Assembly: GCF_028641065.1 (NCBI RefSeq)
Contig: NC_073405.1
Location: 6,572,001 to 6,636,000, forward strand
Direction of reading: 5' to 3'
Length of the DNA: 64,000 nucleotides
From: Leucoraja erinacea
Taxonomy: Eukaryota
The notes under the pieces were generated by a model. The model was not told where the DNA came from and searched no databases. It saw only the letters and a program-made list of their open reading frames with translations. The translations under genes were made by a program, and so were the position numbers. Position 1 is the first letter of the stretch. Each line of letters starts with the position of its first letter. Below are positions 2,676-57,646 of this stretch, one piece after another.

Positions 2676-3739
2676 AGTCTTCAAGACCTGAACATGAAGA
2701 TGGTGTCAAACTAATGGTAGATTCAATTAACAGTTCTGAAGCGATTCACTGTACGCAGAATGCATCAGCAAGATATTACTTGACCAGTCCCATTACCACG
2801 GTGGTGATCCCGGTCATTTCAAGCATCATCCTGATCATTGGCCTCCCGGCGAATGTGCTGGGCCTTTGGGTTCTGGCCACCAAGGTCCAGAGGATGCCCT
2901 CCACCATCTTCCTGATGAACCTGGCAACGGCCGACCTCCTCCTGATCCTGGTGCTGCCCTTTAAAATCCACTATCACTTCCAGGGCAACAACTGGGTCTT
3001 CGGCGAAGCTCTGTGTCGGACGATGACCGCCTTCTTCTACGGCAACATGTACTGCTCCATCCTCCTCCTCTCTTTCATCAGCATCGACCGCTACTTTGCC
3101 CTGGTCCATCCACTTCACGCCAAACGCTTCCGCGCCAACGGCATAGCGGTGGGAGCCTGCTCCATGCTTTGGGTTCTTGTCTGCCTCTCTGTGATACCCT
3201 TTCTCCTCCAGAGGCAGGCATATCCAATCCGGGACCTAAATATCACGACCTGCCACGATGTCTTGCCAGCCAGCGTGGACTCTGGCTATTTCTTCTACTA
3301 CTTTGTGTGTCTTATTGTCGTGGAATTCCTTGTTCCTTGCCTAGTCACTGTATTTTGTTACGTGTCCATAATCAAAACCCTGATGGTGAATGATCGCAAG
3401 TACGTGAAAGCTGTGAGCGCCATCGTTTTAGCGTTGATAGTGTATGTGGTGTGTTTCACTCCCAGTAAGATAATCCTGCTCATTCACCACTCCCGGTACC
3501 ACCTTATACATTGCAGCGGCCTCTATTTATATTACATGATCTTCCTGGAGCTCAGCACCCTCAATAACTGCATCGACCCCTTTATCTTTTATTACTTCTC
3601 CCAGGAGTTTTGGAGCAAACTGGGGCGTTCCCTTGTCTTTTGCAAAGAAAACCCAAAAGATAAAGGGTCGAGAAAATCTGCTCGGAAACGTTCTTGGCCC
3701 AATATGCCGTCAGCCCGCAGAGAGAACACACTAGTATAA
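2676..3739 (+). CDS. Protease-activated receptor-like GPCR copy 1 (PAR3/PAR4-type), 7TM exon; exon 1 not found in window
   Basis: Pyrimidine tract and acceptor TTTTTCTTAATTGCAG ending 2675, phase 1 in the 2645..3739 ORF frame. Intact 7TM with GLPAN, NLATADL, WVFGEALC, DRY, the PAR ECL2 hallmark ITTCHDVL and DPFIFY. The TTG ORF start is intronic. Confidence 0.9.
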
Positions 3740-3749
3740 GAAGCACCAG

Positions 3750-3846
3750 TGTCTGAAGAAGGGTCTCGACCCGAAACATCACCCAGTCCTTCTCTCCAGA
3801 GATGCTGCCTGTCCCGCTGAGTGACTTCAGCATTTTGTGTCTACAC
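3750..3846 (+). mobile_element. Penelope pLTR remnant with degenerate minimal hammerhead motif, directly after the stop codon of PAR copy 1
   Basis: CTGAAGA-A-GGGT-CTCG-ACCC-GAAAC-ATC; a CpG-type G>A change lies in stem III. Confidence 0.65.
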
Positions 3847-5249
3847 CATTGCAAGGCATGGAGCAAAGCCAGCTGAATGTACACGGGGAAGTGGACAACT
3901 AACGTCAAGTTTTGCAACATTAAAGTCAATGCTGGTTATAAATCTTGCCTGTTTTTCCCCTTTTGTTGGAAATGAGGAACAAGCTCAGCGACAATAGGTT
4001 TGTGAACTTTAGTTGCACCTGCCTTTTTATCTGCACACATCTCGTTTTTAATAATGCCTGTATACTAACCACCTTGTTCAAGGAAGTCAACTCAAGAGTC
4101 ATGTCATGAGTGTTTTATTTCCGTATGTCCCAAACGGAACAATAAAATGCTCACTGGCAGCAGCACGACAGAATATGTAAGCGTAGTAGAACTCTGTAAA
4201 GAAAATATTAAGTGAAAAAAAAGAGTTGAGTATTCTCGCACACCATCTCACACACACCATCTCACACACACCATCTCGCACCCACGCCGCAAAAGGACAA
4301 CACCAAGTCTATATAGTTTGGAGCTTATTTGGAGATTGTAGTGTTGGCTTCAAGGAAGATGCTGTTCCTGAACCTGGACGTCACAGCTTTTGGATTCCTG
4401 TATCTTCTTCCTGAGGGCAGGAATGAAATGAGTGTGTGTCCAGGGTGGTGTGGAGTTGCCTTGAGATGCAAGTCATTAGAGTCTTAAATTTTGCTGACCT
4501 TTAGTGCCAATAATTTCTCCAATAATCAGTTTTTAAAGCTGTTGCTAATTTATTTTTATTTTTTATTTTTTTTTTGTCCTACTCATAAAATTACTGAGGA
4601 GTTTCTCTGTCTTCTGCGAAACCAACACAGGTAACTTGTAGGTACACAAAATTGCTGGAGAAACTCAGCGGGTGCAGCAGCATCTATGGAGCGAAGAAAA
4701 TAGGCGACGTTTCGGGCCGAAACCCTTCTTCAGACAACTTGTAATTGCTCTGCCATTTCCGTATTTCCACTATGACACCTCCAGTCTCAGTCTGCAAGCA
4801 ATTCGCGCTAATGTTTGCCAATATTTTTCCTTGGACTGTAGAATTTAGAGATAGAGCATGGAAGCTGGCTCTTCGGCCCATCGAGTCCGCGCTGACCAGT
4901 GATCGCCTCGTACACAAGCACTACACTGCACACCGGGGACAATTTTTTACAATTTACCGAAGCCAATTAGCCTATAAACCTGTGCGTGTTTGTAGTGTGG
5001 GAGGAAACCGGAGGACACAAAAAAAACTCACGGGGTGAACGTTCAAATTCTTTGGTCAGGATCAAACCCTTGACCCTGAAGCTGTAAGGCAGCAACTCTG
5101 TGCTATCTCTACCACTGCACCACTGTGCTGTCCAAAATGTTTGTTATCATTTGTCTCATGTGGTTCACTAATTATCTACAGGTGGTTTTGGCTGGTTAAA
5201 ATATCCAAAACAGTTTGCTCTGCTTTCCTGTTCCTTATTTCTCATGCCT

Positions 5250-8078: not shown

Positions 8079-8160
8079 ATGGCTCTGTCTGCTCTCTGTC
8101 AAAAGGTCTTTCTTTTTGCGGTTTTGGCCTCGTCAGCTGAGTTTTGCAAAGTGACCAGAG
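8079..8160 (+). CDS. PAR-like copy 2, exon 1 (signal peptide MALSALCQKVFLFAVLASSAEFCKVTR-)
   Basis: Kozak-context ATG, 27 codons + 1 nt, hydrophobic core, donor AG|GTAAGT at 8161. Phase 1 matches the acceptor at 13955 (G+GA = Gly). Confidence 0.8.
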
Positions 8161-13955: not shown

Positions 13956-14968
13956 GAAGTCCGAAAGTACGGAGTTTCCCCCTCTACAAAGATGGCAACA
14001 ACACTTTTCTGAATGATTCTACCAAGGAGCATCTCAACAGTTCCATTACCACGGTGGTGATCCCGGTCATTTCAAGCATCGTCCTGATCATTGGCCTCCC
14101 GGCGAATGGTCTTGCCCTTTGGGTTTTGGCCACCAAGGTCCAGAGGATGCCCTCCACCATCTTCCTGATGAACCTGGCAACGGCCGACCTCCTCCTGATC
14201 CTGGCGCTGCCCTTTAAAATCCACTATCACTTCCAGGGCAACAACTGGGTCTTCGGCGAAGCTCTGTGTCGGACGATGACCGCCTTCTTCTACGGCAACA
14301 TGTACTGCTCCATCCTCCTCCTCACCGTCATTAGCATCGACCGTTACTTTGCCCTGGTCCACCCGTTCTACTCCAAAGGCTTCAGAGACAATAGGTTTGC
14401 TACGGTTACCTGCGTGACGATTTGGTTTCTTGTTGGACTCTCCACCATACCGTTCCTTTGGAAGAAGCAGGTGCACTGGTTGAAGAACCTAAATATCACG
14501 ACCTGCCACGACGTCTTGCCGGAAGATGTGGCCTCCGATTACTACTTCGTGTGTCTGATCGCTTTTGGCTTTCTCATCCCGTTTCTCATCACGATATTCT
14601 GCAACGTGTCGGTAATCCGAGCGCTGGCCGTTAGCGCGGGGCCGTTCGGCCTGGCTGTGCGGAACATGACATTGGTGATGATTGTGTTTGTGGTGTGTTT
14701 TCTCCCCAGCAATATAATCCTACTCATCCACCATTCCGGAAGCACCTACAGGTACCTCTATCATTATTACATGATCTGTCTGATGCTGTGCACCCTCAAC
14801 AACTGCATCGACCCCTTCATCTACTACTACCTCTCGGACGATTTCCGGAGTAAAGTGAGAAGCCTGACCTTCTGCACGAGAACGAACGAGGGTTCACGAA
14901 AATCAGCTAGGCCCCTGGCCCAGACAAACACCTCCTCTACTCCGGACAGCAAGGTGTCGAGCAATTGA
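13956..14968 (+). CDS. PAR-like copy 2, 7TM exon (GSPKVR|SFPLYK...)
   Basis: Acceptor TTCTATTTTTGCAG ending 13955; open in frame into ORF 14054..14968. LPANGLALWVLAT..R.PST..LMNLA.ADLLL and DPFIYYY.S..FR.KVR resemble human PAR4; ITTCHDVL present. Confidence 0.92.
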
Positions 14969-16776: not shown

Positions 16777-17284
16777 CGGCACGGTGGCGCAGCGGTAGAG
16801 TTGCTGCCTTACAGCGAATGCAACGCTGGAGGCCCGGTTTCGATCTCGACTACGAGTGCTGTCTGTACGGAGTTTGTACCTTCTCCCTGTGAGAGCCCTG
16901 CAAGGTGTATAATATTTTTTACACTGTCATAGGCCTTTCTTACATTTGCTGTCACAACGCTCTGTAGTCTCTAAACAACCCTTCAGTAATTTTCCTTGCC
17001 CACCATTACAGTATAATAGTGTTTTAAGCCAATAACTCGACACTAGCAGTGGCAATAAATAAATAAAGGCAGCTTTCCAGCCCCTTATCTCATTGGCCAC
17101 GCTCGGCTGCAAAACGGTGTCAATCTGGTGGACCATCTTCCTCTAGTCGTGGAAGTGGAACAGCTTAGGGCCTCCCTTCATCTAAATCCGGCCCTGCCTG
17201 TGACCTGCTTGGGTTTTCTCTGAGATCTTCAGTTTCCTCCCACACTCCAAAGACGAACAGGTTTGTAGGTTAATAGGCTTGATA
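16777..17284 (+). mobile_element. 5' half of a HE1/V-SINE, itself interrupted by a hAT-like fragment at about 16892-17195
   Basis: Head GGCACGGTGGCGCAGCGGTAGAG. The SINE resumes after …TAAATCCGGCCCTG, breaks at GGCTTGATAT and continues at 25414. Confidence 0.7.
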
Positions 17285-20200
17285 TAATAATAATAAAAGT
17301 TTTATTTCAGACACAGGTCCATATAACACATCATACAGTATAAGGAGATACAAAAAATACATTAAAAAATTGCATATTAGCCTATAAGATATACAGTACA
17401 AGCTATTGCACCAATGCCATCTTAGCCTAGAAGTGAATCTATAGCAGCTTTTCAGAGGGCTGACTAGGGCTTCAATTATGTGATTCTCTGACTTGTCCAG
17501 GCGACACATAAAACTAAACATCAGCTGTCTTAAGAGTGCCTCACAGGTTGGCACTCTAGTGGACACAAACAATTGACTGGCACTATGCCACCTAGGGACA
17601 CGAAGTAGCAACCTCATTGCATCATTGTATGCTACCTTAAGCCTCTGCATACTCTTTTTCTTATAGTTAGACCACAATTGAGCAGTATATAACGGTGTGA
17701 TATAGGTTCTGAACAAGGAACACTTCACAGAGTCAGAGCACAAAGAAAACTTCCTTATAAGTATGTTAGCTTGAAAATAAAATTTACAGCGCTGTCGGTA
17801 GAGGCCTTTGTCATCCGTCCAGTCATCGGATAGGACATGACCTAGGTATTTAATTTCCTCACACACAGCAAGAGGACTGCCTGACAAATAAAAGGTCGGA
17901 AAAGTTGATTTCCTGTTCTCAGCGCTTCTAACTATCATTATGCGGCTTTTCTTAGCGTTATACTTTATGTCATAATCAAGGCCATACTGAGAGCACACCT
18001 TCAGCATCTGCTGCAGCCCAGCACTATATGGACAGAGCAGGACCAGGTCGTCTGCATACATCAGATGATTAACAATAGTGTTGCCCACAAGACAGCCAGT
18101 TTTTAACCTATTTAACTGATTTGATAATTCATCCATATAAACATTAAATAAAATAGGAGACAAGATTCCTCCTTGCCGCACTCCGTTACTAACACAGAAT
18201 GGAGCAGATACAACATTGTCCCATTTAACCTGAAACGTTTGATGGGCATATCAAAACACTAAAATTCTCACTAAAAATTTAGGGGCACCTCTATCTAGCA
18301 ATTTTACAAACAATTGTTCATGATTAATTCTATCAAATGCCTTGGACGCATCAATAAAACATAGGAATACAGATGAATTCAGGCTTGTGTACCTGAACAC
18401 AATCTCTTTAAGAGCATAGATACACTGGTCAGTTCCATGTTTTCTTTTGAACCCAAACTGATTGTCAGTAGTAAGGACATACATTTCTAGCTTTGTTAGC
18501 AGTATTCTCTCCAGTACTTTAGACAAGATACTGGCTAATGCAATAGGTCGATAATTGTCAATACTGTTGAGCTTACCAGCCTTGTCTTTAAGCACAGGCA
18601 CTAACATTACAGACATAATAGCATTTGGCAGGACACCATGAACCAGACAACCATTAAAGCACATGGCAGAGCTTATAGCTGGCATATTTTAGATGTTCTG
18701 CAGTAATGCAGTCCATACCGCAGGCTTTGTTGTTATCCAACATGTTAATGGCATCATAGACATCTGCTGCCCTAACTATCATATCTGCTGAGAGATCAAT
18801 ATGTTCATGATTGATTCTAACTGGGTTACTTTTAACACAATTTTACTTCGGAGTCACGTGAGTGACTACCTGAAGAACCCGCTCAGTGTGCAGGTGCGGC
18901 ATTAACGTCCAGCTGTGCAACGGCGGCCCAGACGGGAGTCGGGCGCTCCCTCAACTAGCCTGAAAGAAGGAACGTTAGGTAAGCACCTACCTTAATCGGG
19001 CCTTGTCTTTTTTGCTCCAGGGGGAGCAAAGCAGCAGAGGAAGCGGCCCCCGTTCGACTCCAGCGAAGGAGCCGACAGTGGAGGGGGAGAGGCGGCAACG
19101 GGACCGCACACGCTGCGGACCACAGACACGGGTGCTGCGCTGATGCCGGTCCGCTGAACAGCTGTTTGACTAACAGCAGCGGACCGGAGGGAAATTTAAA
19201 AACCGGCCGGCAACCCCTGCAGACTCCCGACAAGGAGAATCGCCGCCCGAGAACCGCAAAAATTCCGACCGAAAACGGCAGGCAGCCTCTATCAATAAGG
19301 TAAGACCAAACCTCAGGCTGGAGACAGTAAAAACAAGTATGTCTGTTTCCCCAAGCCAGAGGAGGTCATGGAGCTAAAAAACTCCAGAAAAACGAGGGGT
19401 CACTGGCTGAATGCCAAGGGAGCTAACACTCCCACCCCAGTGCTATTGCACTAGCCATCTCCCTTGTCGAGGGATTGATGGGACCAGAGCTGGGCTGGTC
19501 AAAGAGGAGGGGTGTAAGACCAAACCTCAGGAAAAGCGATCTCACGGAGGTAGGGCATATGCCTCCTCCACAGTATCTACAGTACCCCTCTGCTCCCTCT
19601 TCGAGGCTAGCAAGGGAGACCAGGGCTGGGCTGGTCTACAACAAGGGCAGGCGGACGAGAGCAGAAGTATGCCAGGGGAGCAGGATCATGAAGAGCTGCT
19701 GGGTGTCGTGGGCCACTATACGGCACCACCACGCGCAGGAAGACTACTGGAACCCAAGATGGCAGCCAGTATCAACCATCTCTCCAACAAAGCCCTGCAG
19801 GAGAAGGCCCTTCTAGAAGCTTTAGAAGAGTACACAGCGCCAGAGAATTGTGAGGCACTAAAAGAAGAGTGTCAACGGTCAAATCTGGAGGCAGCTGGGT
19901 CAGCAGATTCGCAGTCAAGAGCCTTTGCTCGTTCCACGGAACATACTAACATGACCACCTGCCAACAGGATGTATTAGCACTAATGTGCAATACACAATT
20001 GAGATCAACAATCTAAGGCAGGACAATATAAGACCTGCCCTCAACCCCAAATATGCGGGGCTATGCAAAACCGCTGCAGCGGAAAGAGAGGCAGCTAAAC
20101 CTGTGGGCCTCATGAGGGCAGGCCCGGGAACGAGCGGGACATCTCATCCGACACCCAGCTGGCAGCACCCCTCGGCATCCACCAGTCGACACCCACATCC

Positions 20201-26740: not shown

Positions 26741-26822
26741 ATGGTCTGGACCCAACCCTCCTGCACTTTCCTTGTCTCAATTCTTTTCCTCCTCTGTGCA
26801 GCATTCTGCTCCTCACAGGAAG
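26741..26822 (+). CDS. PAR-like copy 3, exon 1 (signal peptide MVWTQPSCTFLVSILFLLCAAFCSSQE-)
   Basis: ATG in CCAATGG, 27 codons + 1 nt (same 82-nt length as copy 2 exon 1), hydrophobic core, donor AG|GTAAGA at 26823, phase 1. Confidence 0.8.
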
Positions 26823-28661: not shown

Positions 28662-29710
28662 AAAGCTCAGGAGATGATGGCAGGGGAAGAAGTCTCGTCT
28701 ATGTTAATAGTCCAACAAATGGACGTTCCAAGGTCATTGAGGGAGTGTTGGATAAAACCGCCAAGTATTACTTGACCACGGCTATTACAACGACCGTGAT
28801 CCCTTCTCTCTATATCATGGTCTTCACCTTTGGCCTCGCAGCTAATGGGTTGGCTCTGATCAATCTCATCATCAATATCCAGCGGATGCCCTCCACCATC
28901 TTCCTGATGAACCTGGCGACGGCCGACCTCCTCCTGATCCTGGCGCTGCCCTTTAAAATCCACTATCACTTCCAGGGCAACAACTGGGTCTTCGGCGAAG
29001 CTCTGTGTCGGACGGTGACCGCCTTCTTCTACGGCAACATGTACTGCTCCGTCCTCCTCCTCACCTTCATCAGCATCGACAGGTACTGTGCCCTGGTCCA
29101 CCCGTTCTACTCCAAGCGCTTCAGGGACAATAGGTTTGCTGCGGCGACCTGCTTGGTCATCTGGGCTCTCGTTGGGCTCTCTGTCATACCCTTTCTCCTC
29201 CAGAGACAGGTGTACCCATCCAAGGAGTTGAACATCACAACCTGCCATGACGTCTTGCCCGAAGACATACAGCATGGCTACTTCTTCTACTACTTTGTGT
29301 GCTTGGTTGTCTTTGAGTTCCTCATTCCCTGCCTTATAACTATATTCTGTTATGTATCTGTCATCAAAACACTGATGGCCAAGAGTGACAAATATATCAA
29401 AGCAATAAGGGCCATAATCCTAGTGCTGGTGGTCTATGTGGTCTGCTTTGCTCCTAGTAACATCATCTTGCTCATCCATTTCTCCCAGTTTCACCTGGTG
29501 GGGAACAATCACCTGTATTTGTGTTACGCCATCTGCCTTGTATTCAGCACCCTCAACAGTTGTATAGACCCCTTCATTTATTACTATACGTCTGATGAGT
29601 TTCGCCACAGTGTGAGAAGCATTATTTCTTTTCGGAAGGAGAAGAGAAGTGAGGATTCCAGGAAAACCATTATCCGTGTAGATTGCACATCGACATCAAA
29701 GACAGTTTAG
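28662..29710 (+). CDS. PAR-like copy 3, 7TM exon (ESSGDDGRGR|SLVYVN...)
   Basis: Acceptor TTTCCCTTTGTCTGTCTAG ending 28661, phase 1. Intact 7TM with DRY, ITTCHDVL, CFAPSN and DPFIYY. The stop codon lies in a SINE tail. Confidence 0.92.
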
Positions 29711-34068: not shown

Positions 34069-34762
34069 CCTCCTTTTAACTTTGCCTCTCTTGCCTTAAA
34101 ACTATCCCCTCTGATATTTCCACCCTGGGGAAATGTTCTGACTGTCTACCCTATCTATGCCTCGCATAATTTTAAATACCGTACTTCTATCAGTTCTCTG
34201 CCGAACCTCCGACGTTCCAACGGAAACAAACCAAATTTGTGCAACCTCTTCTTATAGCTAATACCCGCTAATCTAGGCATCATTCTGGTAAAACTCTTCT
34301 GCATCCTCTCCACAGCTTCCACATCCTTCCTGTTTGGGGGGGACCAGAACTGCAGGGAATATTCCAAATACAGCAGTTAATCTGCCAGCACCTACAGCCC
34401 TTTCTAATTTGAATGGAAGTAATGACGGCATTTAGTCCTGGGTCCCATAGATAAAACAGAAAATATGACGAGAAACAATGAAACAATGAAACAATTAAAA
34501 TATTCGACCGGTCATGCGGCATCTGCGGGAAAAAGAGACAAGAAGTAATTTATTTTATTTTGTTTCTAGTTCAGTCTGAAGAAGGGGCTTGACCCGAAAT
34601 GTCGCCCATGCCTCCTATCCATAGATGCTGCCTCACCCACTGAGTTACTCCGGAATTTTGTGTCTACTAGTTATTTTTTAAAGTTTTGTTTAATTTAGAG
34701 ATACAGCGTGGAATTAAGTCCTTCGCTGACCATGATCCCCCCCCCCCCCCCACACACCACAC

Positions 34763-34920
34763 NNNNNNNNNNNNNNNNNNNNNNNNNNNNNNNNNNNNNN
34801 NNNNNNNNNNNNNNNNNNNNNNNNNNNNNNNNNNNNNNNNNNNNNNNNNNNNNNNNNNNNNNNNNNNNNNNNNNNNNNNNNNNNNNNNNNNNNNNNNNNN
34901 NNNNNNNNNNNNNNNNNNNN
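34763..34920. other. Assembly gap (N run)
   Basis: Run of N. Confidence 1.
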
Positions 34921-34983
34921 CGTACAGGATCAAACACATGTCTCTTGTCACTGACACACACACACACACAAAGATATGATACA

Positions 34984-35115
34984 NNNNNNNNNNNNNNNNN
35001 NNNNNNNNNNNNNNNNNNNNNNNNNNNNNNNNNNNNNNNNNNNNNNNNNNNNNNNNNNNNNNNNNNNNNNNNNNNNNNNNNNNNNNNNNNNNNNNNNNNN
35101 NNNNNNNNNNNNNNN
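34984..35115. other. Assembly gap (N run)
   Basis: Run of N. Confidence 1.
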
Positions 35116-37479
35116 CAAGAGACACACACACACCCTCAGAACACACACAGTAGTTTTGTATTACATGATGGAAAATTAACCTTATATAGAGAGATTCACA
35201 AAAAGCCACTTCCAATGACTTGATGTCATTTTGGCAAGTTGGTGAGGGGGGTTTTCTCGGTGCATTTGCGTTGACGTGGTTTCCACTAATCTTTCCTCAA
35301 CTGACCAAACACACCTGCTTCATCCATTTCATACTACCAAGAAAATGACAACACACACACACACACACACACAGCGGCGCAGCGGTACACTGCCTTACAG
35401 CGCCACACACCACAGGGTTCGATCCCGACTACGGGTGCTGTCTGTACGGAGTTTGTACGTACTCCCCGTGACCTGCGTGGATTTTCTCCGAGTTCTTCAG
35501 ATTCCTCTCACACTCCAAACACGTACAGCTTTATAAGTTAACTGGCTTGGTATCAGTGTGAATTGTCCCCTAGTGTGTGTAGGATAGTGTTAATATGCAG
35601 TGATCGCTGGTCGGCGCGGACTCGGTGGGCCCCACTGTATCTGTAAACTAAACTGTACAGCACATGAACAGGTCCTTCAGCAGAACATGATGCTGTGTTA
35701 AACTAATCTCATCTGTCTGCACCTGATCCATTCTCTGCATATCGCCACTATTGTATCGGCCTCCACCACCACCCCAGGCAGCACGTTCCAGGCACCCACC
35801 ACTCATTGTGTTGAACAATTGTCCCTCCCATCTCCTTTAAAATTTGTCCCTTAACATAAGCGCCCTGGGGAAAAGGTTGTGACTGTCGACCCTATCTATA
35901 CCTCTCATCATTTCATATACCTCTCTCAAGCATTCACAAGGATGTTGCCAGGACTCAAGGGCCTGAGCTATCGGGAGCGTTTACGCAAGCCTAGGACTAT
36001 TCCTTGGAGCGCAAGAGGATGAGGGGTGATCTTATAAAATATATAAAATAAAGCAGTAAAATTGGGGTAGGCCAGCGGCCCAGCATGTCGAGAGTTGCGA
36101 CCAACATGCCCCAGGACACTAGTCCCACCTGCCTGCGGGTGCCCCATATCGGAGTTTGTACCATACTATCCATGTACCAGCGTAAATGTTTCCTAAACAT
36201 TACACATTCCCTACACCCTACTGCGTACAGCCGGCATAAGTTCCACTGGCCATCATCCTATGTGTAAAAATTGTACCCCTAGTGTGTATTAAATAGTTTC
36301 CATATGCACCTTAAAGCTATGTCCTTTGCGTCCTCGGTGGGCCCCACTGTATGGGCAAGAAACTCTCTGTGTACAGCACAGGAACAGGTCCTCTCAGCAG
36401 TTTATGATGCTGTGTTCTAATCTCATCTGTCTGCACCTCATCCATTCTCTGCATATCAAGGAATATTGTATCTAGCCTGCCACCTCTCCCCAGAGCCCGT
36501 GATCCAGGCACCCACCACTCATTGTGTTGAACAATTGTCCCTCACCTTTTCCTTTGACAAATTTGTCCCTTGACAAACATGCCCTGGGATTGAACACTAA
36601 GTGACTGTCACCAACTATACAACTCTCAACATTTCATATACCAACTCTCAAGCATCACAAGGATGACTAATGAAGGACTTTTTGGCCACCTATCGGACCT
36701 GTGATGCAAGCCTAACACTCATTCCTTGTCAGCGCAAGACTTGGGGGGTGATCTTATAAAGCTATATAAAACTAAATAAATAGAATATTGTAACGGTCTC
36801 CTTGCATGTCTTTCTGAACAAAAACTGTTCAGGCAGCTACAGCTTGTGCCTGAACGCTGTTGCCCCATAGTTCTAAACCCACCAAATCCTTGTACCATTC
36901 TAAATTTTCCTAAATCATTACACAGTCCCTGCCTCAGATACGATCCTCCGGCCTGCCCATTCCCTACACCCACCATCCTATGGTTAAAAATGGTACCCAC
37001 TGACATGCTTCCTACATAAATCCTTCTAGACCCCTCTCAGATCTTCTGAAAGCTATCTGTTAGGATTCCCAGAGTAAATACAAAACTCTGGGCAAGAAAC
37101 TCTTGTGTGTCTACCCAATCTATAGCTGGAATGATTTTCCTGAAGATCGATAAGACTCACCGCAACTTTGACCACTTTTAAAACAAGGACTGAAAACTTT
37201 TAGCCTACTCAAGCTTTCAGCTAAATCTCTACCCTTTTAACTTTTGCATTTTGAGAATGGCAACATCCTCGTAAATTTGCTTTTGCTTTTCTTTTTCCAG
37301 CTTCAATTTTATTTCATGGTACCCGAAATGAACATTTTATTGCAGCCTGACCAACGTTTTATATGTGAAGCAACATGAGTCTGCCTTCGTATATGAAATG
37401 CTGCTATATGAAGGCCATTTTGTCCACCCTATCTACCTGTGATGCCTCTTTCAACAAATTATGTACCCGTACCCCTGGA

Positions 37480-39917: not shown

Positions 39918-40008
39918 ATGAACCGCACTCTGTTGCTGCAGGTTGTTCTACTGACCCTGTGTGTGGTCTGGTGCGGGGCGAGAGACGGCCCTACTCTAGA
40001 CTATGATG
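39918..40008 (+). CDS. F2RL3: PAR-like copy 4, exon 1 (MNRTLLLQVVLLTLCVVWCGARDGPTLDYD-)
   Basis: ATG, typical signal peptide, 30 codons + 1 nt, donor G|GTGAGT at 40009. Phase 1 matches the acceptor at 49735. The symbol is tentative (see exon 2). Confidence 0.75.
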
Positions 40009-41603: not shown

Positions 41604-41618
41604 TTAGGAGGAGAGTTA

Positions 41619-41823: not shown

Positions 41824-43071
41824 TTATTAGGGTTTTCATTCTGGGTAACTCGATGCATCTAATGCTTCAATCAAAGGACATTGTGGAAACTGGACAAAAT
41901 GTCCAGGGTCTGTGTGTGGATGGGTCCATCATCTGAAGGGTCTCCTTTTCCCATAATAAGGAACTTTTATTATGAAGTCACAGTGTACAAAATACTGCGT
42001 CCATCAAAACTGCTATTCGTGCAGTTTGTAAACATCAGCCATTGGTTGGTGGCAAAAAATGCTGGAGTAACGCAGCGGGCGAGGCAGCATCTATGGAGAG
42101 AAGGAATCGGGACCCGAAACGTCGCCCATTCCTTCCCTCCATAGATGCTGTCTCGCCCGCTGAGTTACTCCAGCATTTTGTGTCTACCTCTGATTTGACC
42201 AGCATCTGCAGTTCTTGCAGGCTAGATGCAGGAAGATTGTTCCCAATGTTGGGGAAGTCCAGGACAAGGGGTCACAGTTTAAGGATAAAGGGGAAATCCT
42301 TTAGGAGCAAGATGAGAAAAACATTTTTCACACAGAGAGTGGTGAATCTCTGGAACTCTCTGCCACAGAAGGTAGTTGAGGCCACAGTTCATTGGCTATA
42401 TTTAAGAGGGAGTTAGGTGTGGCCTTTGTGGCTAGTGGGATCAGGGGGTATGGAGAGAAGGCAGGTACAGGATACTGAGTTGGATGATCAGCCATGATCA
42501 TATTGAATGGCGGTGCAGGCTCGAAGGGCCAAATGGCCTCTACTCCTGCACCTATTGTCTATGTTTCTTACACAGTTGATGGTACAGCATCTACACTAGT
42601 CCCACCTGCCTGTGACTGACCCATATCCCTCTACACCTGTCCTATCCATGTACCTGTCCAAATGTTCCTTAACTGTTGTGGTAGTACCCCCTCTGGCAGC
42701 TCGCTCCATACACCCACCACCCTTTGTGTAAAATATATTGCCCCTCAGTTTCCTAGTAAATCTTTACCCCTCTCACCTTAAACTTATGTCCTCTGGTTCT
42801 CGGTCCTGGGTTAAAGACTCTGTGCATTCACCCTTTCTGTTTCGCTGATCATGTTATGCATCTCTTTCCGATCACCCCCCCCCCCCAGCCTCCTGCACTT
42901 CCTATTTAATCTCCCCCCCCCTCACCTTAGAGCAGTGATCTGTGCTGGGACCTCTGCTGTTTGTGAGTATGTATATATATATATATATGAACTAAAGATG
43001 TCCACCACTTTATTATCCCTGATGATATCAAGCTTCTTGAATAATGTGGGAGAGATGAAGATAGATGAAGA

Positions 43072-43848
43072 GTATTATCTAAATGGTGGCCGATTGGGAA
43101 AGGGGGAGATGCAGCGAGACCTAGGTGTCGTGGTACACCAGTCATTGAAGGTAGCCATGCAGGTGCAGCAGGCAGTAAAGAAAGCGAATGGTATGTTAGC
43201 TTTCATTGCAAAAGGATTTGAGTATAGGAGCAGGGAGGTTCTACTGCAGTTGTACAGGGTCTTGGTGAGACCACACCTGGAGTATTGCGTACAGTTTTGG
43301 TCTCCAAATCTGAGGAAGGACATTATTGCCATAGAGGGAGTGCAGAGACGGTTCACCAGACTGATTCCTGGGATGTCAGGACTGTCTTATGAAGAAAGAC
43401 TGGATAGACTTGGTTTATACTCTCTAGAATTTAGGAGATTGAGAGGGGATCTTATAGAAACTTACAAAATTCTTAAGGGGTTGGACAGGCTAGATGCAGG
43501 AAGATTGTTCCCGATGGTAGGGAAGTCCACGACAAGGGGTCACAGCTTAAGGATAAGGGGGAAATCCTTTAAAACCGAGATGAGAACTTTTTTCACACAG
43601 AGAGTGGTGAATCTCTGGAACTCTCTGCCACAGAGGGTAGTTGAGGCCAGTTCATTGGCTATATTTAAGAGGGAGTTAGATGTGGCCCTTGTGGCTAAGG
43701 GGATCAGGGGGTATGGAGAGAAGGCAGGTACGGGACACTGAGTTGGATGATCAGCCATGATCATATTGAATGGCGGTGCAGGCTCGAAGGGCCGAATGGC
43801 CTACTCCTGCACCTAATTTCTATGTTTCTATGTTTCTATGTTTCTATA
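43072..43848 (+). mobile_element. Young CR1 LINE 3' fragment in copy 4 intron
   Basis: Open RT C-terminal frame YYLNGGRLGKG…LVRPHLEYCVQFWSP…; (TTTCTATG)n tail; nearly identical to 62731-63611. Confidence 0.88.
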
Positions 43849-49735: not shown

Positions 49736-50871
49736 ATGAAAATGACACCGATGTTTCAGAAGACGACATTAACACGAGCTCAATACCAAGTGTGGCTGAC
49801 ATCATGAAATCATTTAAAGCCACTCGGCAGAAGGTGAATGGTACCAATGAGACGTACATCATGGTGGACGATGCAGTTAGAGCCCACCTGACAGGTTCCA
49901 CCACCTTAGCTGTCATCCCAGCTCTTTATACCTTGGTCTTTGCTGTTGGGCTGCCAGCTAACGCACTGGGACTGTGGATAATGGCCACTAAGATCAGGAA
50001 ACTCCCTTCCACCGTCTTCCTGATCAACCTGACCACGGCCGACCTCCTCCTCATGCTGATCCTGCCGTTCAAGATCTCCTACCACCTCCAGGGCAACAAC
50101 TGGGTGTTCGGCGAAGCTCTGTGCCGGACGATGACCGCCTTGTTCTACGGCAACATGTACTGCTCCATCCTCCTGCTCACAGTCATCAGCGTGGACCGCT
50201 ACTGCGCCCTGGTCCACCCGTTCACCTCCCGGCAGTTCAGGGACAACGTGTTCGCCGCCGGCGTGTGCTCTGCCATCTGGGTGACCACCCTGCTCCTGGT
50301 CCTGCCCTTCCTCTTCGTGGAGCAGCAGCTCCGGCCCCACAACCTGAACATCACCACCTGCCACGACGTGCTGCTGCAGGATCAGCAGACCGGGTTTTTC
50401 TTCCGCTACTTTGTATCGCTGGTGGTGGTCGGCTTTTTGATCCCCTGCTGTGTCACCTTATTCTGCTACGGCTCCGTCATCAAGACCTTAGCGTCCAACA
50501 AGAAGAGTTACACACGGGCCGCGGTGGTCACTTTGCTGATTCTGCTGGTGTACGTCTGCTGTTTTGCCCCCAGCAATGTAATCCTCCTCATTCACCACTC
50601 CGAGTACCAGCTCACCGGCGACAGTGATCTCTACATTTACTACATGGTCTGCCTGGTTCTCAGCAGCGCCGGCAGCTGCATCGACCCCTTCATCTATTAT
50701 TACATTTCCGACGAGTTCAGGGTCAGGGTCAAACATGTCATTTGCTGCAGCAAGGACCAGCAGTCCTCTCGATCTGGCCGGACCACCACTCAAGAACTCC
50801 TGCGCACCAACACCACCACCAACCACCACCTCCTCCTCAAACTCCCGGGCCAGGGCAACAGTGAGAACTAA
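49736..50871 (+). CDS. F2RL3: PAR-like copy 4, 7TM exon (…ADIMK|SFKATR…); best candidate for the PAR4 orthologue
   Basis: Acceptor CCTCTTCCTTTCCTTGTTCAG ending 49735, phase 1. Intact 7TM. The pro-region PTLDYDDE…DD…SIPS resembles human PAR4 PSVYDES…DDSTPS, and RKLPST/NLTTADLLL is PAR4-like. PAR3 affinity cannot be excluded without a tree. Confidence 0.88.
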
Positions 50872-52892: not shown

Positions 52893-52927
<35 letters not shown>

Positions 52928-54594: not shown

Positions 54595-55078
54595 GTTCAC
54601 CAGACTGATTCCTGGGATGGCAGGACTTTCATATGAAGAAAGACTGGATAGACTCGGCTTGTACACGCTAGAATTTAGAAGATTGAGGGGGGATCTTATA
54701 GAAACTTACAAAATTCTTAAGGGGTTGGACAGGCTAGATGCAGGAAGATTATTCCCGATGTTGGGGGAGTCCAGAACTAGGGGTCACAGTTTAAGGCTAA
54801 GAGGGAAGTCTTTTAGGATCGAGATGAGAAAATCATTTTTTACACAGAGAGTGGTGAATCTGTGGAACTCTCTGCCACAGAAGGTAGTTGAGGCCAGTTG
54901 ATTGGCTATATTTAAGAGGGAGTTAGATGTGGCCCTTGTGTCTAAGGGGATCAGGGGGTATGGAGAGAAGGCAGGGATGGGATACTGAGTTGGATGATCA
55001 GCCATGATCATATTGAATGGCGGTGCAGGCTCGAAGGGCCGAATGGCCTACTCCTGCACCTATTTTCTATGTTTCCAT
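54595..55078 (+). mobile_element. CR1 LINE 3' fragment
   Basis: ORF 54617..54901 is the CR1 RT C-terminus, followed by the CR1 tail. Confidence 0.82.
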
Positions 55079-55437
55079 GACTTCGAGAACATAGCTTATA
55101 ACTTGGCGATTTCTATTGTAAAAATAAACCTTTAAAGAACAGAAATGGTAGCATATCCCAATGGAAATAAAACCACATGATTGAAATGCGGCATAAGCAA
55201 CATTGTGACTGATACACTTGTTAATTATCAATGAAAGAGAAACAGCTAATTTAAATTACAAGCAAAAAAAACCTTTGTAGTAAATGATCAATTTATTTAA
55301 AATATTGCTTTCTGATTTTGTTTCAATGTATTACTGAATATATGATACTTTGAAGATCAGATGCAGAGAAAATAAAATGACAGATGGCTGTAATCAGTGT
55401 ACTATAATCGGTTGTACATGGCATACACTAGTTCAAT

Positions 55438-55439
55438 AT

Positions 55440-55472
<33 letters not shown>

Positions 55473-55850
55473 CTATATTTCGGACTCAAGGCCCAGACAA
55501 GGGGCAACACTAAATAAAAATGCATTGCATATTAATAAAATATCATAGTGCATATAAAATCTTAGTATATCACTTATAAAAGCATCATAAATTATATATT
55601 AAAAAAAACACAATACATGAATTAAAATCCAGAATAAAAGAATGATCAATGTCCTACAGCCAGCCAATGATACCAGTGTCTTCACAACTGGGATTTGTGG
55701 CGTGGAATGCTAAGCCTTATGTTTGACAAGACCACAATAATCAATTTTTTAGTAATTTTAGGGTCAATATTGATCCATTTCAATTGTAAAAGCAAATTAG
55801 TCCCACACATCTAAACAAAACGTTCCATGTTTGTGCCGATGCTCCTGAAT
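55438..55850 (-). mobile_element. 3' end of a second RTE-X-like LINE with (ATT)n tail
   Basis: The minus strand reads IVVLSNIRLSIPRHKSQL*RHWYHWL, similar to IEALVSPLKSCYRFTSRLRWHWCNSL near 17400. (ATA)n array at 55441-55472. Confidence 0.55.
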
Positions 55851-56073
55851 TGAATTTTATGATGACATAACTGACTGCGGAAGTTGGAACATTGGGCAAA
55901 CTCGAAGTGGCGGAGGAACTGAGAGGATCAGGCAACATCTGTTGAGGAAACGAACAAACGACATTTCGGGTCAGATATGTTTAAGAAGGAACTGCAGATA
56001 CTGGAAAAATCGAGGGTAGACAAAAATGTTGGGGAAACTCAGCGGGTGAGGCAGCATCCATGGGGCGAAGGAA

Positions 56074-56112
56074 TAGGTGACGTTTCGGGGTCGAGACCCT
56101 TCTTCAGACTGA
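56074..56112 (-). ncRNA. Minimal type I hammerhead-ribozyme-like motif in a Penelope pLTR remnant (55978-56116)
   Basis: Minus strand AGU-CUGAAGA-A-GGGU-CUCG-ACCC-C-GAAAC-GUC-ACC: conserved core, stem II and GUC cleavage triplet, with one extra C. Activity is untested. Confidence 0.55.
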
Positions 56113-56618
56113 TGGTCAGATACAACATGTTTGTGACATTGGGCCAAACAGAGCAAATGTTTTGCTTCAGTTTAGTTTAGAGACACAGCACGGAAACAGG
56201 CCCTTCGGGCCCACCGAGTCGGTGCCGACCAGCGACCCCCGCACACTAGTACTATCCTATACACACACTAGGGACTATTTACGCTTACGCAAAGCCAATT
56301 AACCTACAAAACTGCACGTCTTTGGAGTGTGGGAGGGGACCTGAAGACCTCGGGGAAGACCCAAGTGGGATCACGGGCAGAACGTACAAACTCCGCACAG
56401 ACAAGCACCCGTGGTCAGGATCGAACACGGGTCCCTGGCACTGCATGCGTGACCACAAGCCACGGGTGCAGCTGCGCCAACCAAATTACGGGCGCTCCAC
56501 CGCTGCGCCGCCGTGCCGCCCGTCATTTGGTTGGTACAGCATGTCAGATGGTGAGCTGCGGACTTTTACATTGCCGCGAGGGATGCCTGATCTTCGAAGC
56601 CACCCGACCCCAGATCAC

Positions 56619-57646
56619 TCAGCTACTATTCGTGGGAGATCTTTTGGAAGAAATCATCCGAGACAACCAAGTGCTGGTTGTCTGCGAATTACGAAATCTA
56701 GTGACAACTTTCTGGATACCGATCATCTTCTTTATTTTGTTCCTCAATTCATCCGAAATGAAGTAGTAGATGAAGGGGTCGATGCAGCTATTGAAGCTAC
56801 AGATGGGCACGGTTATCATGTAATGGATGTAGAGTTTAGGGATCCATTGGTGCAGGAAAAGTATTACATTGCTGGGACCAAAGCACACGAGGTATATCAG
56901 CAGAGTTAAAACAGTGACGACCTTGGCCTTTCTGTACTCTCTCTTGTTAAGCAGTAACATTCTGATCACAAAACTATAACAGACGATAGTGATTAGAGCT
57001 GGAATGATGAAGCCTATTATCACCACGGCCTGCCAGTAATAGAAATAAACACTCTGCATATTTTCCAGGTAGACGTCGTGGCAGGTAGTGATGTTAGTGA
57101 TGCTAGTGAGGCTGATCTTAAAGGACTGTTGCACAAGGAATAATGGCAGGACAAAGAGGCCAACCAAGACCCAAATGGCAGCACAGGTTGATACAGCAAA
57201 CCTGTTGCCCCTGAACCGCCTGGAGTAGAACGGGTGGACCAGGGCACAGTATCGGTCGATGCTGATGAAGGTGAGGAGGAGGACGGAGCAGTACATGTTG
57301 CCGTAGAACAAGGCGGTCACCGTCCGACACAGAGCTTCCCCGAAGATCCAGTTGTTGCCCTGGATGTGGTAATGGATCTTGAACGGCAGCACCAGGATCA
57401 GGAGGAGGTCGGCAACAGCCAGGTTGATCTGGCAAATGGTGGAAGGCTTCTTGATGTTGCCGGCCATAAACCAAATGGCCAGAGCATTGGCTGGGAACCC
57501 GATGATAAACACCAGGATGTAAAGGGCAGGAGTTAACACAGTGGTGACGGAATTTGTCATTTGACGTTCACCCCATTCATTTAAGATAGCTCCATCGTCA
57601 TTATTCGAACTGGATGCTAGCACTCCGCCTGCATCTGGCATAGGTT
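56619..57646 (-). CDS. PAR-like copy 5 (inverted), 7TM exon; no basic residue at the aligned activation site
   Basis: Minus-strand acceptor TCTCATTTCTTTAG (AG at 57648-57647), phase 1, in frame with ORF 56619..57641. GFPAN, DRY, ITTCHDVY, CFGPSN and DPFIYY present. Exon 1 not found in window. Confidence 0.9.

What the first reader, a model, noticed from the sequence alone, without database searches (positions are those of the whole stretch)
2676..57646. Five-gene PAR array: one receptor scaffold, five different activation sites
Seen: five intact PAR-type 7TM exons. Aligned 31-38 residues before the first TM1 proline, the sites read DGVK|LMVDS, PKVR|SFPLYK, GRGR|SLVYVN, DIMK|SFKATR and DAGG|VLASS. 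Known: human sites are PAR1 LDPR|SFLLRN, PAR2 SKGR|SLIGKV, PAR3 LPIK|TFRGAP and PAR4 PAPR|GYPGQV, and human F2RL3 is a single gene. Inference: a local expansion of a PAR4-like gene carries PAR1-, PAR2- and PAR3-like sites on a shared scaffold. It could act as a lineage-specific protease-sensing array in cartilaginous fish. None has the P2 proline thrombin prefers, so other proteases may be the activators.
Basis: partly seen in the sequence, partly recalled or inferred. Interest (0 to 1): 0.85.

Follow-up and report, generated by a model that had tools for sequence, protein, structure and literature searches.

The report
Skate cluster of five PAR4-type receptors
The little skate carries five neighbouring, intact genes for protease-activated receptors that all descend from the PAR4 branch of the family; three keep their own conserved protease cut site, two do not, and the set is shared by sharks and rays rather than special to this fish.

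Summary
The window has exactly five intact PAR-type coding exons (A-E), each behind a polypyrimidine/AG acceptor with a phase-1 intron. The quoted peptides are all there. The two N gaps lie between C and D, about 4.8 kb or more from any PAR exon.

A careful tree of the 7TM core, with the converted tract removed, puts all 46 sampled shark, ray and chimaera copies in one clade (98/95). That clade sits inside a PAR4-type superclade and outside PAR1, PAR2 and true PAR3. AU tests reject B+PAR1 and D+PAR3.

So the cluster is an old cartilaginous-fish expansion, not a skate novelty. NCBI already auto-annotates the genes as "PAR2/3/4-like"; my literature searches found no description of it.

Only B (R|SF), C (GR|S) and D (DIM[K/R]|[S/T]F) have signal-peptide exons and sites conserved in orthologues. 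D also keeps an acidic di-tyrosine motif that I otherwise saw only in non-mammalian tetrapod PAR4. E has no signal peptide and no conserved basic P1. A's post-cut residues are not conserved.

A 59-codon TM2-TM3 tract is homogenised at synonymous sites, which indicates gene conversion. B and E show transcript evidence. Synteny could not be tested. Earlier scan notes concern this same stretch only.

The parts
2676..3739 (+). Copy A, main coding exon (353 aa in frame plus split codon). Ray-specific sister of B. Its exon 1 was not found in the window.
   Evidence: ORF and acceptor; 7tm_1; groups with Pristis, Mobula and Narcine A-type genes at 100/99; no signal-peptide exon in 1-2675.
2699..2725 (+). 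The basic residue is aligned with R/K in Hypanus and Mobula, but P1' is L, P or A.
8079..8160 (+). Copy B exon 1: start codon, signal peptide, first base of the split codon, then donor GTAAGT.
   Evidence: tblastn with the Rhinoraja orthologue; donor; same junction in the spliced Logan protein P0033.
13956..14968 (+). Copy B main coding exon.
   Evidence: P0033 matches it with 3 differences in 336 aa.
13961..13990 (+). B site PKVR|SFPLYK. R|(S/T)F is kept in 8 of 8 ray B rows; R|(S/G) plus a hydrophobic residue in 5 of 5 shark A/B-type rows.
26741..26822 (+). Copy C exon 1 (signal peptide), donor GTAAGA.
   Evidence: 100% match to residues 1-27 of NCBI protein P0001; donor.
28662..29710 (+). 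Copy C main coding exon. It is the protein NCBI names 'proteinase-activated receptor 2-like [Leucoraja erinacea]'.
28679..28708 (+). C site GRGR|SLVYVN. GR| is kept in 6 of 6 ray, 8 of 8 shark and 1 of 1 chimaera rows.
39918..40008 (+). Copy D exon 1: signal peptide, then ...TLDYD plus the first base of the split codon; donor GTGAGT.
   Evidence: 87.5% match to Amblyraja P0040; donor and phase.
49736..50871 (+). Copy D main coding exon.
   Evidence: 95% identical to Amblyraja P0040.
49798..49827 (+). D site DIMK|SFKATR. (K/R)|(S/T/G) is kept in 14 of 15 D-group rows.
56619..57646 (-). Copy E main coding exon. The first in-frame ATG is at 57641. No signal peptide.
   Evidence: Logan protein P0077 is 99% identical; contigs of run X1 tile 56431-57650.
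57609..57641 (-). E N-terminus MPDAGGVLASS. The pattern P-x-(A/S)GG(V/L/I) is conserved but x is hypervariable (D here, R in Amblyraja).
2790..3070 (+). Converted tract in A (TM1-TM3): 281 nt, 97.5% identical to B 14043-14323.
   Evidence: synonymous pS 0.000 in the 59-codon core against 0.62 outside.
14043..14326 (+). Converted tract in B (partner of A; its 3' 182 nt are 98.4% identical to C).
28884..29114 (+). Converted tract in C: 28884-29065 with A/B; 28971-29114 is 96.5% identical to E.
50087..50174 (+). Shorter, older shared tract in D (88 nt, 96.6% identical to A and B).
57221..57364 (-). Shared tract in E (144 nt, 96.5% identical to C) although E lies on the other strand.
34763..35115 (.). 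Two assembly gaps (34763-34920, 34984-35115) in the C-D intergenic region, flanked by poly-C and CA repeats. Not part of any gene and left unfilled.

Best explanation
The window holds a tandem cluster of five two-exon genes for protease-activated-receptor-type GPCRs. They belong to an old expansion of the PAR4-type lineage in cartilaginous fish. The orthogroups are C, D, E and a single A/B-type gene in sharks and rays, with A/B duplicated in rays; a sixth group, F, occurs only in sharks. Shown: all five ORFs are intact and keep the signalling and ligand-contact motifs of PARs. Shown: B, C and D have a signal-peptide exon, a phase-1 intron and a basic P1 followed by S/T plus a hydrophobic residue 31-38 residues before TM1, and each site type is conserved across its orthologues. 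Inferred: B, C and D work as classical PARs. A protease cuts after the basic residue and the new N-terminus (SFPLYK, SLVYVN or SFKATR) folds back as a tethered agonist. The three site types (x-V/L/P-R|SF; G-R|S; D-I-M-K/R|S/T-F) imply different activating proteases. Inferred: D is the most conservative copy, because it keeps the acidic di-tyrosine motif about 20-25 residues before the cut that non-mammalian tetrapod PAR4 also has. This is a plausible sulfotyrosine docking site for a thrombin-like enzyme. Shown: E lacks a signal peptide and a conserved basic P1, and A's post-cut residues are not conserved. Inferred: A and E are therefore not classical trypsin- or thrombin-type PARs (co-receptor, non-tryptic cleavage or other ligand). 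Shown: interlocus gene conversion keeps a TM2-ECL1-TM3 segment nearly identical among the copies. It is recent among A/B/C and older or shorter with D and E.
For: Anatomy. Family: Pfam 7tm_1 for 5 of 5 copies; PDB best hits PAR2, PAR4, PAR1 for C; invariant D(TM2), TM3 Cys, DRY, ECL2 CHD, CFxP and DPxxY columns in the five-copy alignment. Phylogeny: 65 of 65 cartilaginous-fish array proteins form one clade in FastTree (SH 97). In the careful IQ-TREE of the 7TM core without the tract, 46 of 46 form one clade (98/95), inside a PAR4-type superclade (98/89) whose sister is true PAR3 (99/96), apart from PAR1 (100/100) and PAR2 (100/99). AU tests reject B+PAR1 and D+PAR3. True PAR1-like (Pristis P0145, on another contig) and F2RL2 (Callorhinchus P0139) exist separately. 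Site conservation: B 8/8, shark A/B-type 5/5, C 15/15, D 14/15. Di-tyrosine motif Y[DE][DE]Y: 9 of 15 D rows, 6 of 9 tetrapod PAR4, 0 of 103 other PAR rows. The same DYDEYD motif carries the two sulfation sites of the tick thrombin inhibitor haemathrin 2, about 20 residues before its PR|. Conversion: four-fold site identity is 96-100% in the tract against 52-68% outside for A/B/C, and 81-88% against 39-62% for pairs with D or E. pS is 0.00-0.02 and 0.21-0.26 in the tract against 0.61-0.81 outside. Constraint: rough omega 0.14-0.34 for the 7 pairs where it could be computed. Expression: P0033 is B spliced exactly as predicted. Contigs of X1 cover the E exon at depth 4-6 while unique flanking bins have depth 0.
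Against: No protease or peptide response was measured, so activation is inferred from sequence only. The core tree rejects D+tetrapod PAR4 (p 0.0026), so 'PAR4 orthologue' is not shown. Relations inside the superclade are an unresolved polytomy. Gene conversion, proven here, can make paralogues look monophyletic. Three raw RNA-seq runs (X12, X16, X19; only 5-25% of each was read) gave essentially no reads on the E exon. I found no transcript evidence for A or D of this species, and none for C beyond the NCBI model. A's exon 1 was not found. P1 of D is Lys in skates, which thrombin-type enzymes cut poorly (recalled). Sulfation of the Tyr motif is untested.
Confidence: 0.72

Rival explanations
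1. Ancient paralogy hidden by concerted evolution. The split between a D-type gene (the true PAR4) and a C/B-type gene (GR| or R|SF site) predates the split of cartilaginous and bony vertebrates. D would then be the orthologue of tetrapod PAR4. A/B/C would be orthologues of the ray-finned 'PAR4' and of the tetrapod 'PAR3-like' genes. The single cartilaginous-fish clade would be an artefact of repeated gene conversion in the 7TM core.
For: The di-tyrosine motif is shared only by D and tetrapod PAR4. GR|(S/T/V)(F/L) sites like those of C occur in sturgeon, bichir and lungfish PAR4-like proteins and in the bird and caecilian 'PAR3-like' proteins; the Amia PAR4 has LR|SF. Conversion is proven in this window. 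Shark C-type and A/B-type paralogues pair by species in the core tree: Stegostoma 100, Scyliorhinus 100, Carcharodon 97 SH-aLRT in the quick tree. Tetrapod PAR4 and ray-finned PAR4 do not form one clade.
Against: The AU test on the core without the recent tract rejects D+tetrapod PAR4 (delta lnL 41.7, p 0.0026). Synonymous sites outside the tract are saturated between window copies, so there is no recent conversion there. Short basic sites can converge. The complementary constraint (A/B/C with the ray-finned and PAR3-like group) was not tested.
Confidence: 0.2
2. The five copies are the skate's orthologues of PAR1, PAR2, PAR3 and PAR4, as their site types and the NCBI names 'PAR2-like' and 'PAR3-like' suggest.
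For: The sites resemble those of PAR1 (R|SF), PAR2 (GR|SL) and PAR3 (K|SF/TF). NCBI automatic names.
Against: Trees. AU rejection of B+PAR1 and D+PAR3; C+PAR2 was not AU-tested. Separate PAR1-like and F2RL2 genes exist in cartilaginous fish. The best non-chondrichthyan hits of C and E are PAR4.
Confidence: 0.02
3. A and/or E are decaying or silent copies whose open frames are intact only by chance or because gene conversion patches them. The functional array would then be three genes.
For: A: no signal-peptide exon found in the window, no Logan or NCBI transcript-based model of this species, and variable residues after the basic position. E: no reads in three RNA-seq runs, P1 is Asp here but Arg in Amblyraja, and no NCBI model of this species among the hits.
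Against: Both keep every invariant motif. Both have orthologues with open frames across rays (A) or rays and sharks (E), which I recall as at least about 270 My. Rough omega is 0.14-0.24 for A pairs and 0.23-0.34 for the 3 E pairs with an estimate. The E exon is covered in the X1-X3 contig sets, where neighbouring unique DNA is not. A's end branch (0.15) is like those of its orthologues (0.05-0.16).
Confidence: 0.15
4. The near-identical TM2-TM3 tract reflects purifying selection on the protein, not gene conversion.
For: The tract encodes strongly conserved residues (TM2 Asp, ECL1, TM3 Cys) that are invariant in the five copies.
Against: Four-fold degenerate sites are 28/28, 27/28 and 28/29 identical among A/B/C inside the tract, against 52-68% outside. 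pS is 0.00-0.02 against 0.62-0.81. The boundaries are sharp and differ between pairs.
Confidence: 0.04

Closest known systems
PAR4 (F2RL3) of bony vertebrates
   Same: It is the nearest named relative by sequence: 48-53% identity to C and 41-49% to E. It shares the PAR4-type superclade and the two-exon layout. Copy D and non-mammalian tetrapod PAR4 share an N-terminal (D/E)YD(D/E)Y motif about 20-25 residues before the cut site.
   Different: F2RL3 is a single gene in tetrapods (recalled), whereas there are five here and five or six in sharks. No window copy has the P-x-P-R|G-Y-P-G type site. The core tree does not join D to tetrapod PAR4. Synteny is untested.
PAR2 (F2RL1)
   Same: Copy C's conserved G-R|S-(L/I) resembles the trypsin/FXa-type SKGR|SLIGKV site (recalled). 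PAR2 is C's top solved hit.
   Different: C is not in the PAR2 clade. The resemblance is limited to P2-P2'.
PAR3 (F2RL2)
   Same: Copy D's K|SF resembles LPIK|TFRGAP (recalled), with Lys at P1. True PAR3 is the sister clade of the superclade.
   Different: D+PAR3 is rejected. The chimaera has a separate F2RL2 (P0139). D's candidate docking motif lies before the cut, not after it like PAR3's hirudin-like motif (recalled).
Teleost PAR duplicates (Jin et al. 2016, PMC4771116; abstract and matched passages read)
   Same: A lineage-specific expansion of PAR genes with the two-exon structure retained.
   Different: That paper states that lineage-specific expansion was seen only in teleosts. A term search found no mention of 'shark', 'lamprey' or 'Callorhinchus' in its text. 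The present expansion is in cartilaginous fish and within the PAR4-type branch.
Tick madanin-type thrombin inhibitor haemathrin 2 (PMC11546549; matched passages and sequence table read)
   Same: It has the acidic DYDEYD motif, whose two tyrosines are the sulfation sites, about 20 residues N-terminal of a PR| site. D-type receptors have the same order and similar spacing.
   Different: It is an unrelated secreted inhibitor, so this is an analogy only. That such motifs bind a thrombin exosite is recalled, not from a call. Sulfation of D is untested.

Membership tests
Protease-activated receptor (PAR) family | Class A (rhodopsin-type) 7TM receptor | tested here: met
   Pfam 7tm_1 for 5 of 5 copies, E 8e-45 to 6e-52.
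Protease-activated receptor (PAR) family | Closest relatives are PAR1-4 rather than other class A receptors | tested here: met
   For C, PDB hits are PAR2 263, PAR4 259 and PAR1 247 bits, against P2RY8 189. All five copies lie inside the PAR clade with P2RY8 as outgroup.
Protease-activated receptor (PAR) family | Conserved core motifs: TM2 Asp, TM3-ECL2 Cys pair, DRY, ECL2 'CHD', CFxP, DPxxY (motif names recalled) | tested here: met
   D88, C115, D139-R140-Y141, C194-H195-D196, C261-F262-P264 and D302-P303...Y307 are invariant in the five-copy alignment.
Protease-activated receptor (PAR) family | Separate signal-peptide exon, with an intron before the exodomain | tested here: inconclusive
   Met for B, C and D: exon 1 found with GT donors, all phase 1. 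For A only the acceptor is seen. E has an acceptor but 0 of 11 orthologue models have a signal peptide.
Protease-activated receptor (PAR) family | Basic P1 followed by a tethered-ligand motif in the N-terminal exodomain, conserved among orthologues | tested here: inconclusive
   Met for B (8/8), C (15/15) and D (14/15). Not met for E (basic residue in 2 of 11). A keeps K/R in 3 of 3 sequences but P1' is L, P or A.
Protease-activated receptor (PAR) family | Signalling triggered by proteolytic unmasking of the tethered ligand | not testable with these tools
   Needs cell assays.
PAR4 (F2RL3) orthologue | Falls in one clade with PAR4 of bony vertebrates | tested here: inconclusive
   It lies inside a PAR4-type superclade (98/89), but that clade also holds the tetrapod 'PAR3-like' genes and coelacanth extras, and it is a polytomy. 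D+tetrapod PAR4 is rejected, p 0.0026.
PAR4 (F2RL3) orthologue | PAR4-type N-terminus (acidic di-tyrosine motif before the cut site in non-mammalian PAR4) | tested here: met
   Met for D only. D exon 1 ends ...LDYD. The motif is in 9 of 15 D rows, 6 of 9 tetrapod PAR4 rows and 0 of 103 other rows.
PAR4 (F2RL3) orthologue | Conserved synteny with the F2RL3 neighbourhood | not testable with these tools
PAR1 / PAR2 / PAR3 orthologues | Each copy groups with the clade whose site it resembles | tested here: not met
   Trees. AU tests reject B+PAR1 (p about 0) and D+PAR3 (p 0.013). C+PAR2 was judged by tree only.
Interlocus gene conversion | A bounded tract of near identity, including synonymous sites, between otherwise diverged paralogues | tested here: met
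   Tracts of 80-281 nt at 94-98% identity (one 35-nt D-E run at 100%). Four-fold sites are 96-100% identical inside against 52-68% outside for A/B/C. pS is 0.00-0.02 against 0.62-0.81.

The most novel reading that the evidence does not exclude
The cluster is a division of labour that bony vertebrates never evolved on the PAR4 branch. There would be three receptors tuned to three proteases. One of them (D) would preserve an ancestral sulfotyrosine docking motif placed before the scissile bond, which mammalian PAR4 has lost. In addition, an elasmobranch-wide receptor type (E) has dropped both the signal peptide and the basic cut site while keeping a conserved P-x-(A/S)GG(V/L/I) N-terminus. E would then be a PAR-derived GPCR activated without tryptic cleavage: by a non-tryptic protease, by its native N-terminus, or as a partner of its neighbours.
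Probability: 0.3. Interest if true: 0.75.

Novelty: new member of a known kind. Interest (0 to 1): 0.55.

Why it matters
PARs are how vertebrate cells sense clotting and inflammatory proteases, and textbooks count four of them. Here the PAR4-type branch has five to six long-lived members in cartilaginous fish, each with its own conserved exodomain. That offers natural experiments on how cut-site and docking motifs set protease specificity on a nearly constant receptor body. The di-tyrosine motif shared by copy D and non-mammalian PAR4 suggests a testable ancestral mode of thrombin docking that mammals lost. The E type asks whether a PAR can be re-used without tryptic cleavage. The cluster is also a clean example of gene conversion confined to part of a GPCR gene, and a warning for PAR phylogenies built on 7TM cores. 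The one family-wide study I read (PMC4771116) reports expansion only in teleosts.

Tried and rejected
1. Synteny (SIN3B/CPAMD8 against IQGAP2/S100Z) could not be done. The scan's notes hold none of those gene names.

2. Exon 1 of A: tblastn with four orthologue or paralogue N-termini, plus a scan for ATG, a hydrophobic run and a phase-1 GT donor in 1-2675, found nothing convincing. It may lie outside the window.

3. Exon 1 of E: not found by tblastn. One X1 contig (164 nt) aligns only up to 57650 and has 65 further letters that do not lie on the stretch. I read this as a splice at the predicted acceptor, 57646. The tool's convention for minus-strand records leaves a second reading open, and the letters were not shown.

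5. The signal-peptide heuristic is conservative. It finds only 1/4 to 7/8 in groups that visibly have signal peptides, so only the contrast with E (0/11) is used.

6. dN/dS values are rough, because dS is saturated and undefined for 3 of 10 pairs.

7. Rows dropped before trees. One search used 70 of the 120 proteins listed (all 59 listed cartilaginous-fish proteins except P0001 and P0021, which are window copies C and A, plus 13 named outgroup proteins, mostly PAR4). It also used 105 of 146 representatives (those 290-520 aa long). One search used 88 rows chosen by me (46 array rows and 42 others) and 214 columns (TM1 to helix 8, minus the tract).

8. AU groups were named after seeing the first trees, which weakens the p-values.

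9. Literature: searches gave listings only, apart from the three papers cited. None of the listed titles or abstracts describes a cartilaginous-fish PAR expansion or a PAR4 di-tyrosine motif. The motif word search found four unrelated papers. Supplementary files were not opened and could hold gene lists that I did not see.

10. Structure prediction was considered and dropped, because the tools would not show whether a tethered ligand docks.

Full report
**What is there**

The window contains exactly five PAR-type coding exons (tblastn with three of them finds no sixth locus).
- Read stop to stop, each is preceded by a polypyrimidine run and an AG.
- The exon starts are 2676 (A), 13956 (B), 28662 (C), 49736 (D) and 57646 (E, minus strand). 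From the frames, all five acceptors are phase 1.
- All five match Pfam 7tm_1.
- Copy C's best solved relatives are PAR2, PAR4 and PAR1, well above P2RY8.
- The five proteins are 46-66% identical to each other.
- They share the invariant TM2 Asp, TM3/ECL2 cysteines, DRY, ECL2 CHD, CFxP and DPxxY columns (motif names recalled).

The two N runs lie in the C-D intergenic region, flanked by poly-C and CA repeats. They affect no exon or frame. I did not fill them. They only make the A-C to D-E adjacency depend on the scaffold join. Linkage of the orthologues on one contig in sawfish and in a cow shark supports that join (contig lengths).

**Gene models**

Every search used exon-2 translations, and first exons were located separately.

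tblastn with orthologue N-termini found signal-peptide exons for three copies:
- B: 8079-8160, donor GTAAGT.
- C: 26741-26822, donor GTAAGA, 100% identical to the NCBI protein P0001.
- D: 39918-40008, donor GTGAGT.

The introns are about 5.8, 1.8 and 9.7 kb. No exon 1 was found for A inside the window or for E.

**Whose genes are they**

Copy C is identical to 'proteinase-activated receptor 2-like [Leucoraja erinacea]'. The cluster is therefore at least partly annotated already, under inconsistent automatic names (PAR2-like, PAR3-like, PAR4-like). The best hits outside cartilaginous fish are PAR4 of amphibians, birds, marsupials, sturgeon and coelacanth.

A profile search of 1.84 billion representatives gave outgroups. 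I named 30 of them by cluster look-up.

| Tree | Rows | Result |
|---|---|---|
| FastTree | 180 | All 65 cartilaginous-fish array proteins form one clade (SH 97) |
| Careful IQ-TREE, TM1 to helix 8 minus the converted tract, 214 columns | 88 | All 46 sampled array proteins form one clade (98/95) |

In the careful tree the array clade lies inside a PAR4-type superclade (98/89). Its sister is true PAR3 (99/96). PAR1 (100/100) and gnathostome PAR2 (100/99) are separate.

AU tests reject B-group+PAR1 (delta lnL 58.2, p about 0) and D-group+PAR3 (delta lnL 25.8, p 0.013). A sawfish PAR1-like gene on another contig and a chimaera F2RL2 fall in the true PAR1 and PAR3 clades. The array is therefore additional to those genes.

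**Age and orthogroups**

- E occurs in rays and sharks.
- D occurs in rays, sharks and the chimaera (P0045).
- C occurs in rays, with C-like genes in sharks.
- A and B are a ray-only duplication of one shark gene.
- The chimaera protein P0024 lies at the base of the A/B/C group and is unresolved at the base of the array clade.
- A sixth group, F, is found only in sharks and is absent from the window.

The array is thus chondrichthyan-wide, not a skate novelty.

**The activation sites, judged by orthologues**

- **B:** R|(S/T)F in 8 of 8 ray rows. The shark A/B-type gene has R|(S/G) plus a hydrophobic residue in 5 of 5.
  - Mobula and Hypanus read PGPR|SF and a sawshark reads ANPR|GYPL, so P2 proline does occur in this orthogroup.
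  - P2 Val, as in the skate's PKVR|SF, is also what I recall for the thrombin site of fibrinogen A-alpha.
- **C:** G-R| in 15 of 15 rows. This recalls FXa/trypsin-type sites (recalled).
- **D:** (K/R)|(S/T/G) in 14 of 15 rows, within a conserved PSVADIM(K/R) context.
- **E:** no signal peptide in 0 of 11 orthologue models. The pattern P-x-(A/S)GG(V/L/I) is conserved: Pro in 11 of 11, and (A/S)GG in 10 of 11.
  - The x position is hypervariable: D, R, S, I, A, F, P, S, P, W, R. It is Arg only in Amblyraja and Hemitrygon.
The scan note that copy 5 lost its tryptic site agrees with the Asp here against Arg in the sister skate.
- **A:** a basic residue aligns in the 3 sequences that cover the region, but the next residues are LMVDS, PTKGS and ATKHS. 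No tethered ligand is conserved.

**A link between D and PAR4**

The motif Y[DE][DE]Y sits just after the signal peptide and 20-25 residues before the cut site.
- It occurs in 9 of 15 D rows and 6 of 9 tetrapod PAR4 rows (caecilian, frog, turkey, alligator, turtle, newt).
- It occurs in 0 of 103 rows of all other PAR groups examined (sequences).
- The window's D exon 1 ends ...LDYD, and the split codon and exon 2 continue with acidic residues, as in Amblyraja's LDYDDE.
- The same DYDEYD carries the two sulfation sites of the tick thrombin inhibitor haemathrin 2, about 20 residues before its PR|.
- From memory, sulfated motifs of that inhibitor family bind a thrombin exosite.

I therefore infer that D is the conservative, thrombin-type member of the array and that the motif is a docking site. 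This is an inference by analogy. The 7TM core rejects a D+tetrapod-PAR4 clade (p 0.0026).

**Gene conversion**

A 59-codon TM2-ECL1-TM3 tract is 98-99% identical in nucleotides among A, B and C, and 86-89% identical in pairs with D or E. The rest of the core is 60-72% identical.

| Measure | A/B/C pairs, in tract | A/B/C pairs, outside | Pairs with D or E, in tract | Pairs with D or E, outside |
|---|---|---|---|---|
| Four-fold site identity | 28/28, 27/28, 28/29 | 52-68% | 81-88% | 39-62% |
| pS | 0.00-0.02 | 0.62-0.81 | 0.21-0.26 | 0.61-0.76 |

Best-scoring segments differ by pair:
- A-B: 281 nt (2790-3070 / 14043-14323).
- B-C: 182 nt.
- C-E: 144 nt, despite opposite strands.
- A or B with D: 88 nt.

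This fits the earlier scan note on an A-B tract. In the core tree, shark C-type and A/B-type paralogues pair by species, so concerted evolution is general in this array. That is also the main caveat on the monophyly result, and it sustains the rival reading of ancient paralogy masked by conversion.

**Constraint and expression**

- Rough omega is 0.14-0.34 in the 7 of 10 pairs where dS could be estimated.
- B: Logan protein P0033 (364 aa, contig 1599 nt) is exon 1 spliced to exon 2 exactly as predicted, with 3 differences in the 336 exon-2 residues.
- E: Logan protein P0077 is 99% identical. Three small contig sets (X1-X3, 29-41 million letters, kind guessed as RNA) hold 51-65% of the exon's words.
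- E, laid reads: X1 contigs tile 56431-57650 at depth 4-6, while unique neighbouring bins (55197-55787) have depth 0. Coverage stops within 4 nt of the predicted acceptor.
- Three raw RNA-seq runs, read at 5-25%, have essentially no reads on E. Expression is therefore restricted or low.
- Nothing here speaks to expression of A or D in this species.

**Literature**

The family-wide study PMC4771116 (abstract and passages read) reports four clades and expansion only in teleosts; a term search found no mention of 'shark', 'lamprey' or 'Callorhinchus' in it. The whale shark genome paper mentions PARs once, in passing. Searches listed nothing on a cartilaginous-fish PAR array or a PAR4 di-tyrosine motif. 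Supplements were closed.

**Verdict**

This is a real, conserved and partly annotated gene cluster. It consists of new members of the PAR family, not a new kind of system. Three of the 'five activation sites' stand (B, C, D). Two do not (A, E), and E is the more interesting for that reason.

Noticed in passing
not in the window; proteins P0049, P0097, P0112, P0123, P0078, P0115: A sixth array-type orthogroup (F) appeared only in sharks among the hits. It has a conserved dibasic site R(R/K)|FPI(I/V)Q (LENRK|FVIVQ in P0123). In Heptranchias, Stegostoma and Hemiscyllium it lies on the same contigs as the other array genes. No ray member was seen.
   Followed up: partly
not in the window; P0125, P0128, P0149, P0359, P0370: Birds, a turtle, a newt and a caecilian have a second gene named 'PAR3(-like)'. 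It does not fall in the true PAR3 clade (gecko, ostrich, frog, gar, medaka, chimaera) but next to PAR4-type genes, with GR|(V/T)L sites. It may be a fifth tetrapod PAR that mammals lack. The coelacanth has further extras (P0106, P0131, P0163).
   Followed up: partly
not in the window; tetrapod PAR4 proteins P0053, P0054, P0048, P0064, P0081, P0094: Non-mammalian tetrapod PAR4 carries (D/E)YDDYS directly after the signal peptide and C/I-P-R|(A/S)(I/L)PG about 21 residues later. The motif is degenerate in the opossum and hyena sequences.
   Followed up: partly
window 17273-18181(-), 59443-60336(-), 42851-43738(+), 63055-63663(-): Retrotransposon remains lie between the genes: RVT_1 at 17273-18181 and endonuclease-RT at 59443-60336. 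The ORFs at 42851 and 63055 share a near-identical peptide stretch but have no Pfam hit.
   Followed up: partly
window 55000-55196 and 57758-58545: Very high read depth (hundreds to thousands) at 95-99% likeness in all RNA runs, with many strand-switch and back-joints. These are transcribed repeat families flanking E, not E itself.
   Followed up: no
shark proteins P0008/P0025, P0010/P0022, P0012/P0027: In the 7TM-core tree, C-type and A/B-type paralogues pair by species in three sharks, although their N-termini keep orthogroup-specific sites. Conversion therefore seems to spare the exodomain.
   Followed up: partly
Stegostoma models P0025 and P0115; also P0008 and P0038: NCBI isoform models of different array genes in the zebra shark share identical first exons (the same signal peptide). 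This suggests read-through or shared-promoter transcripts, or model artefacts.
   Followed up: no
window 34700-35175: Both assembly gaps sit in poly-C and CA microsatellite sequence, a likely cause of the assembly breaks.
   Followed up: no
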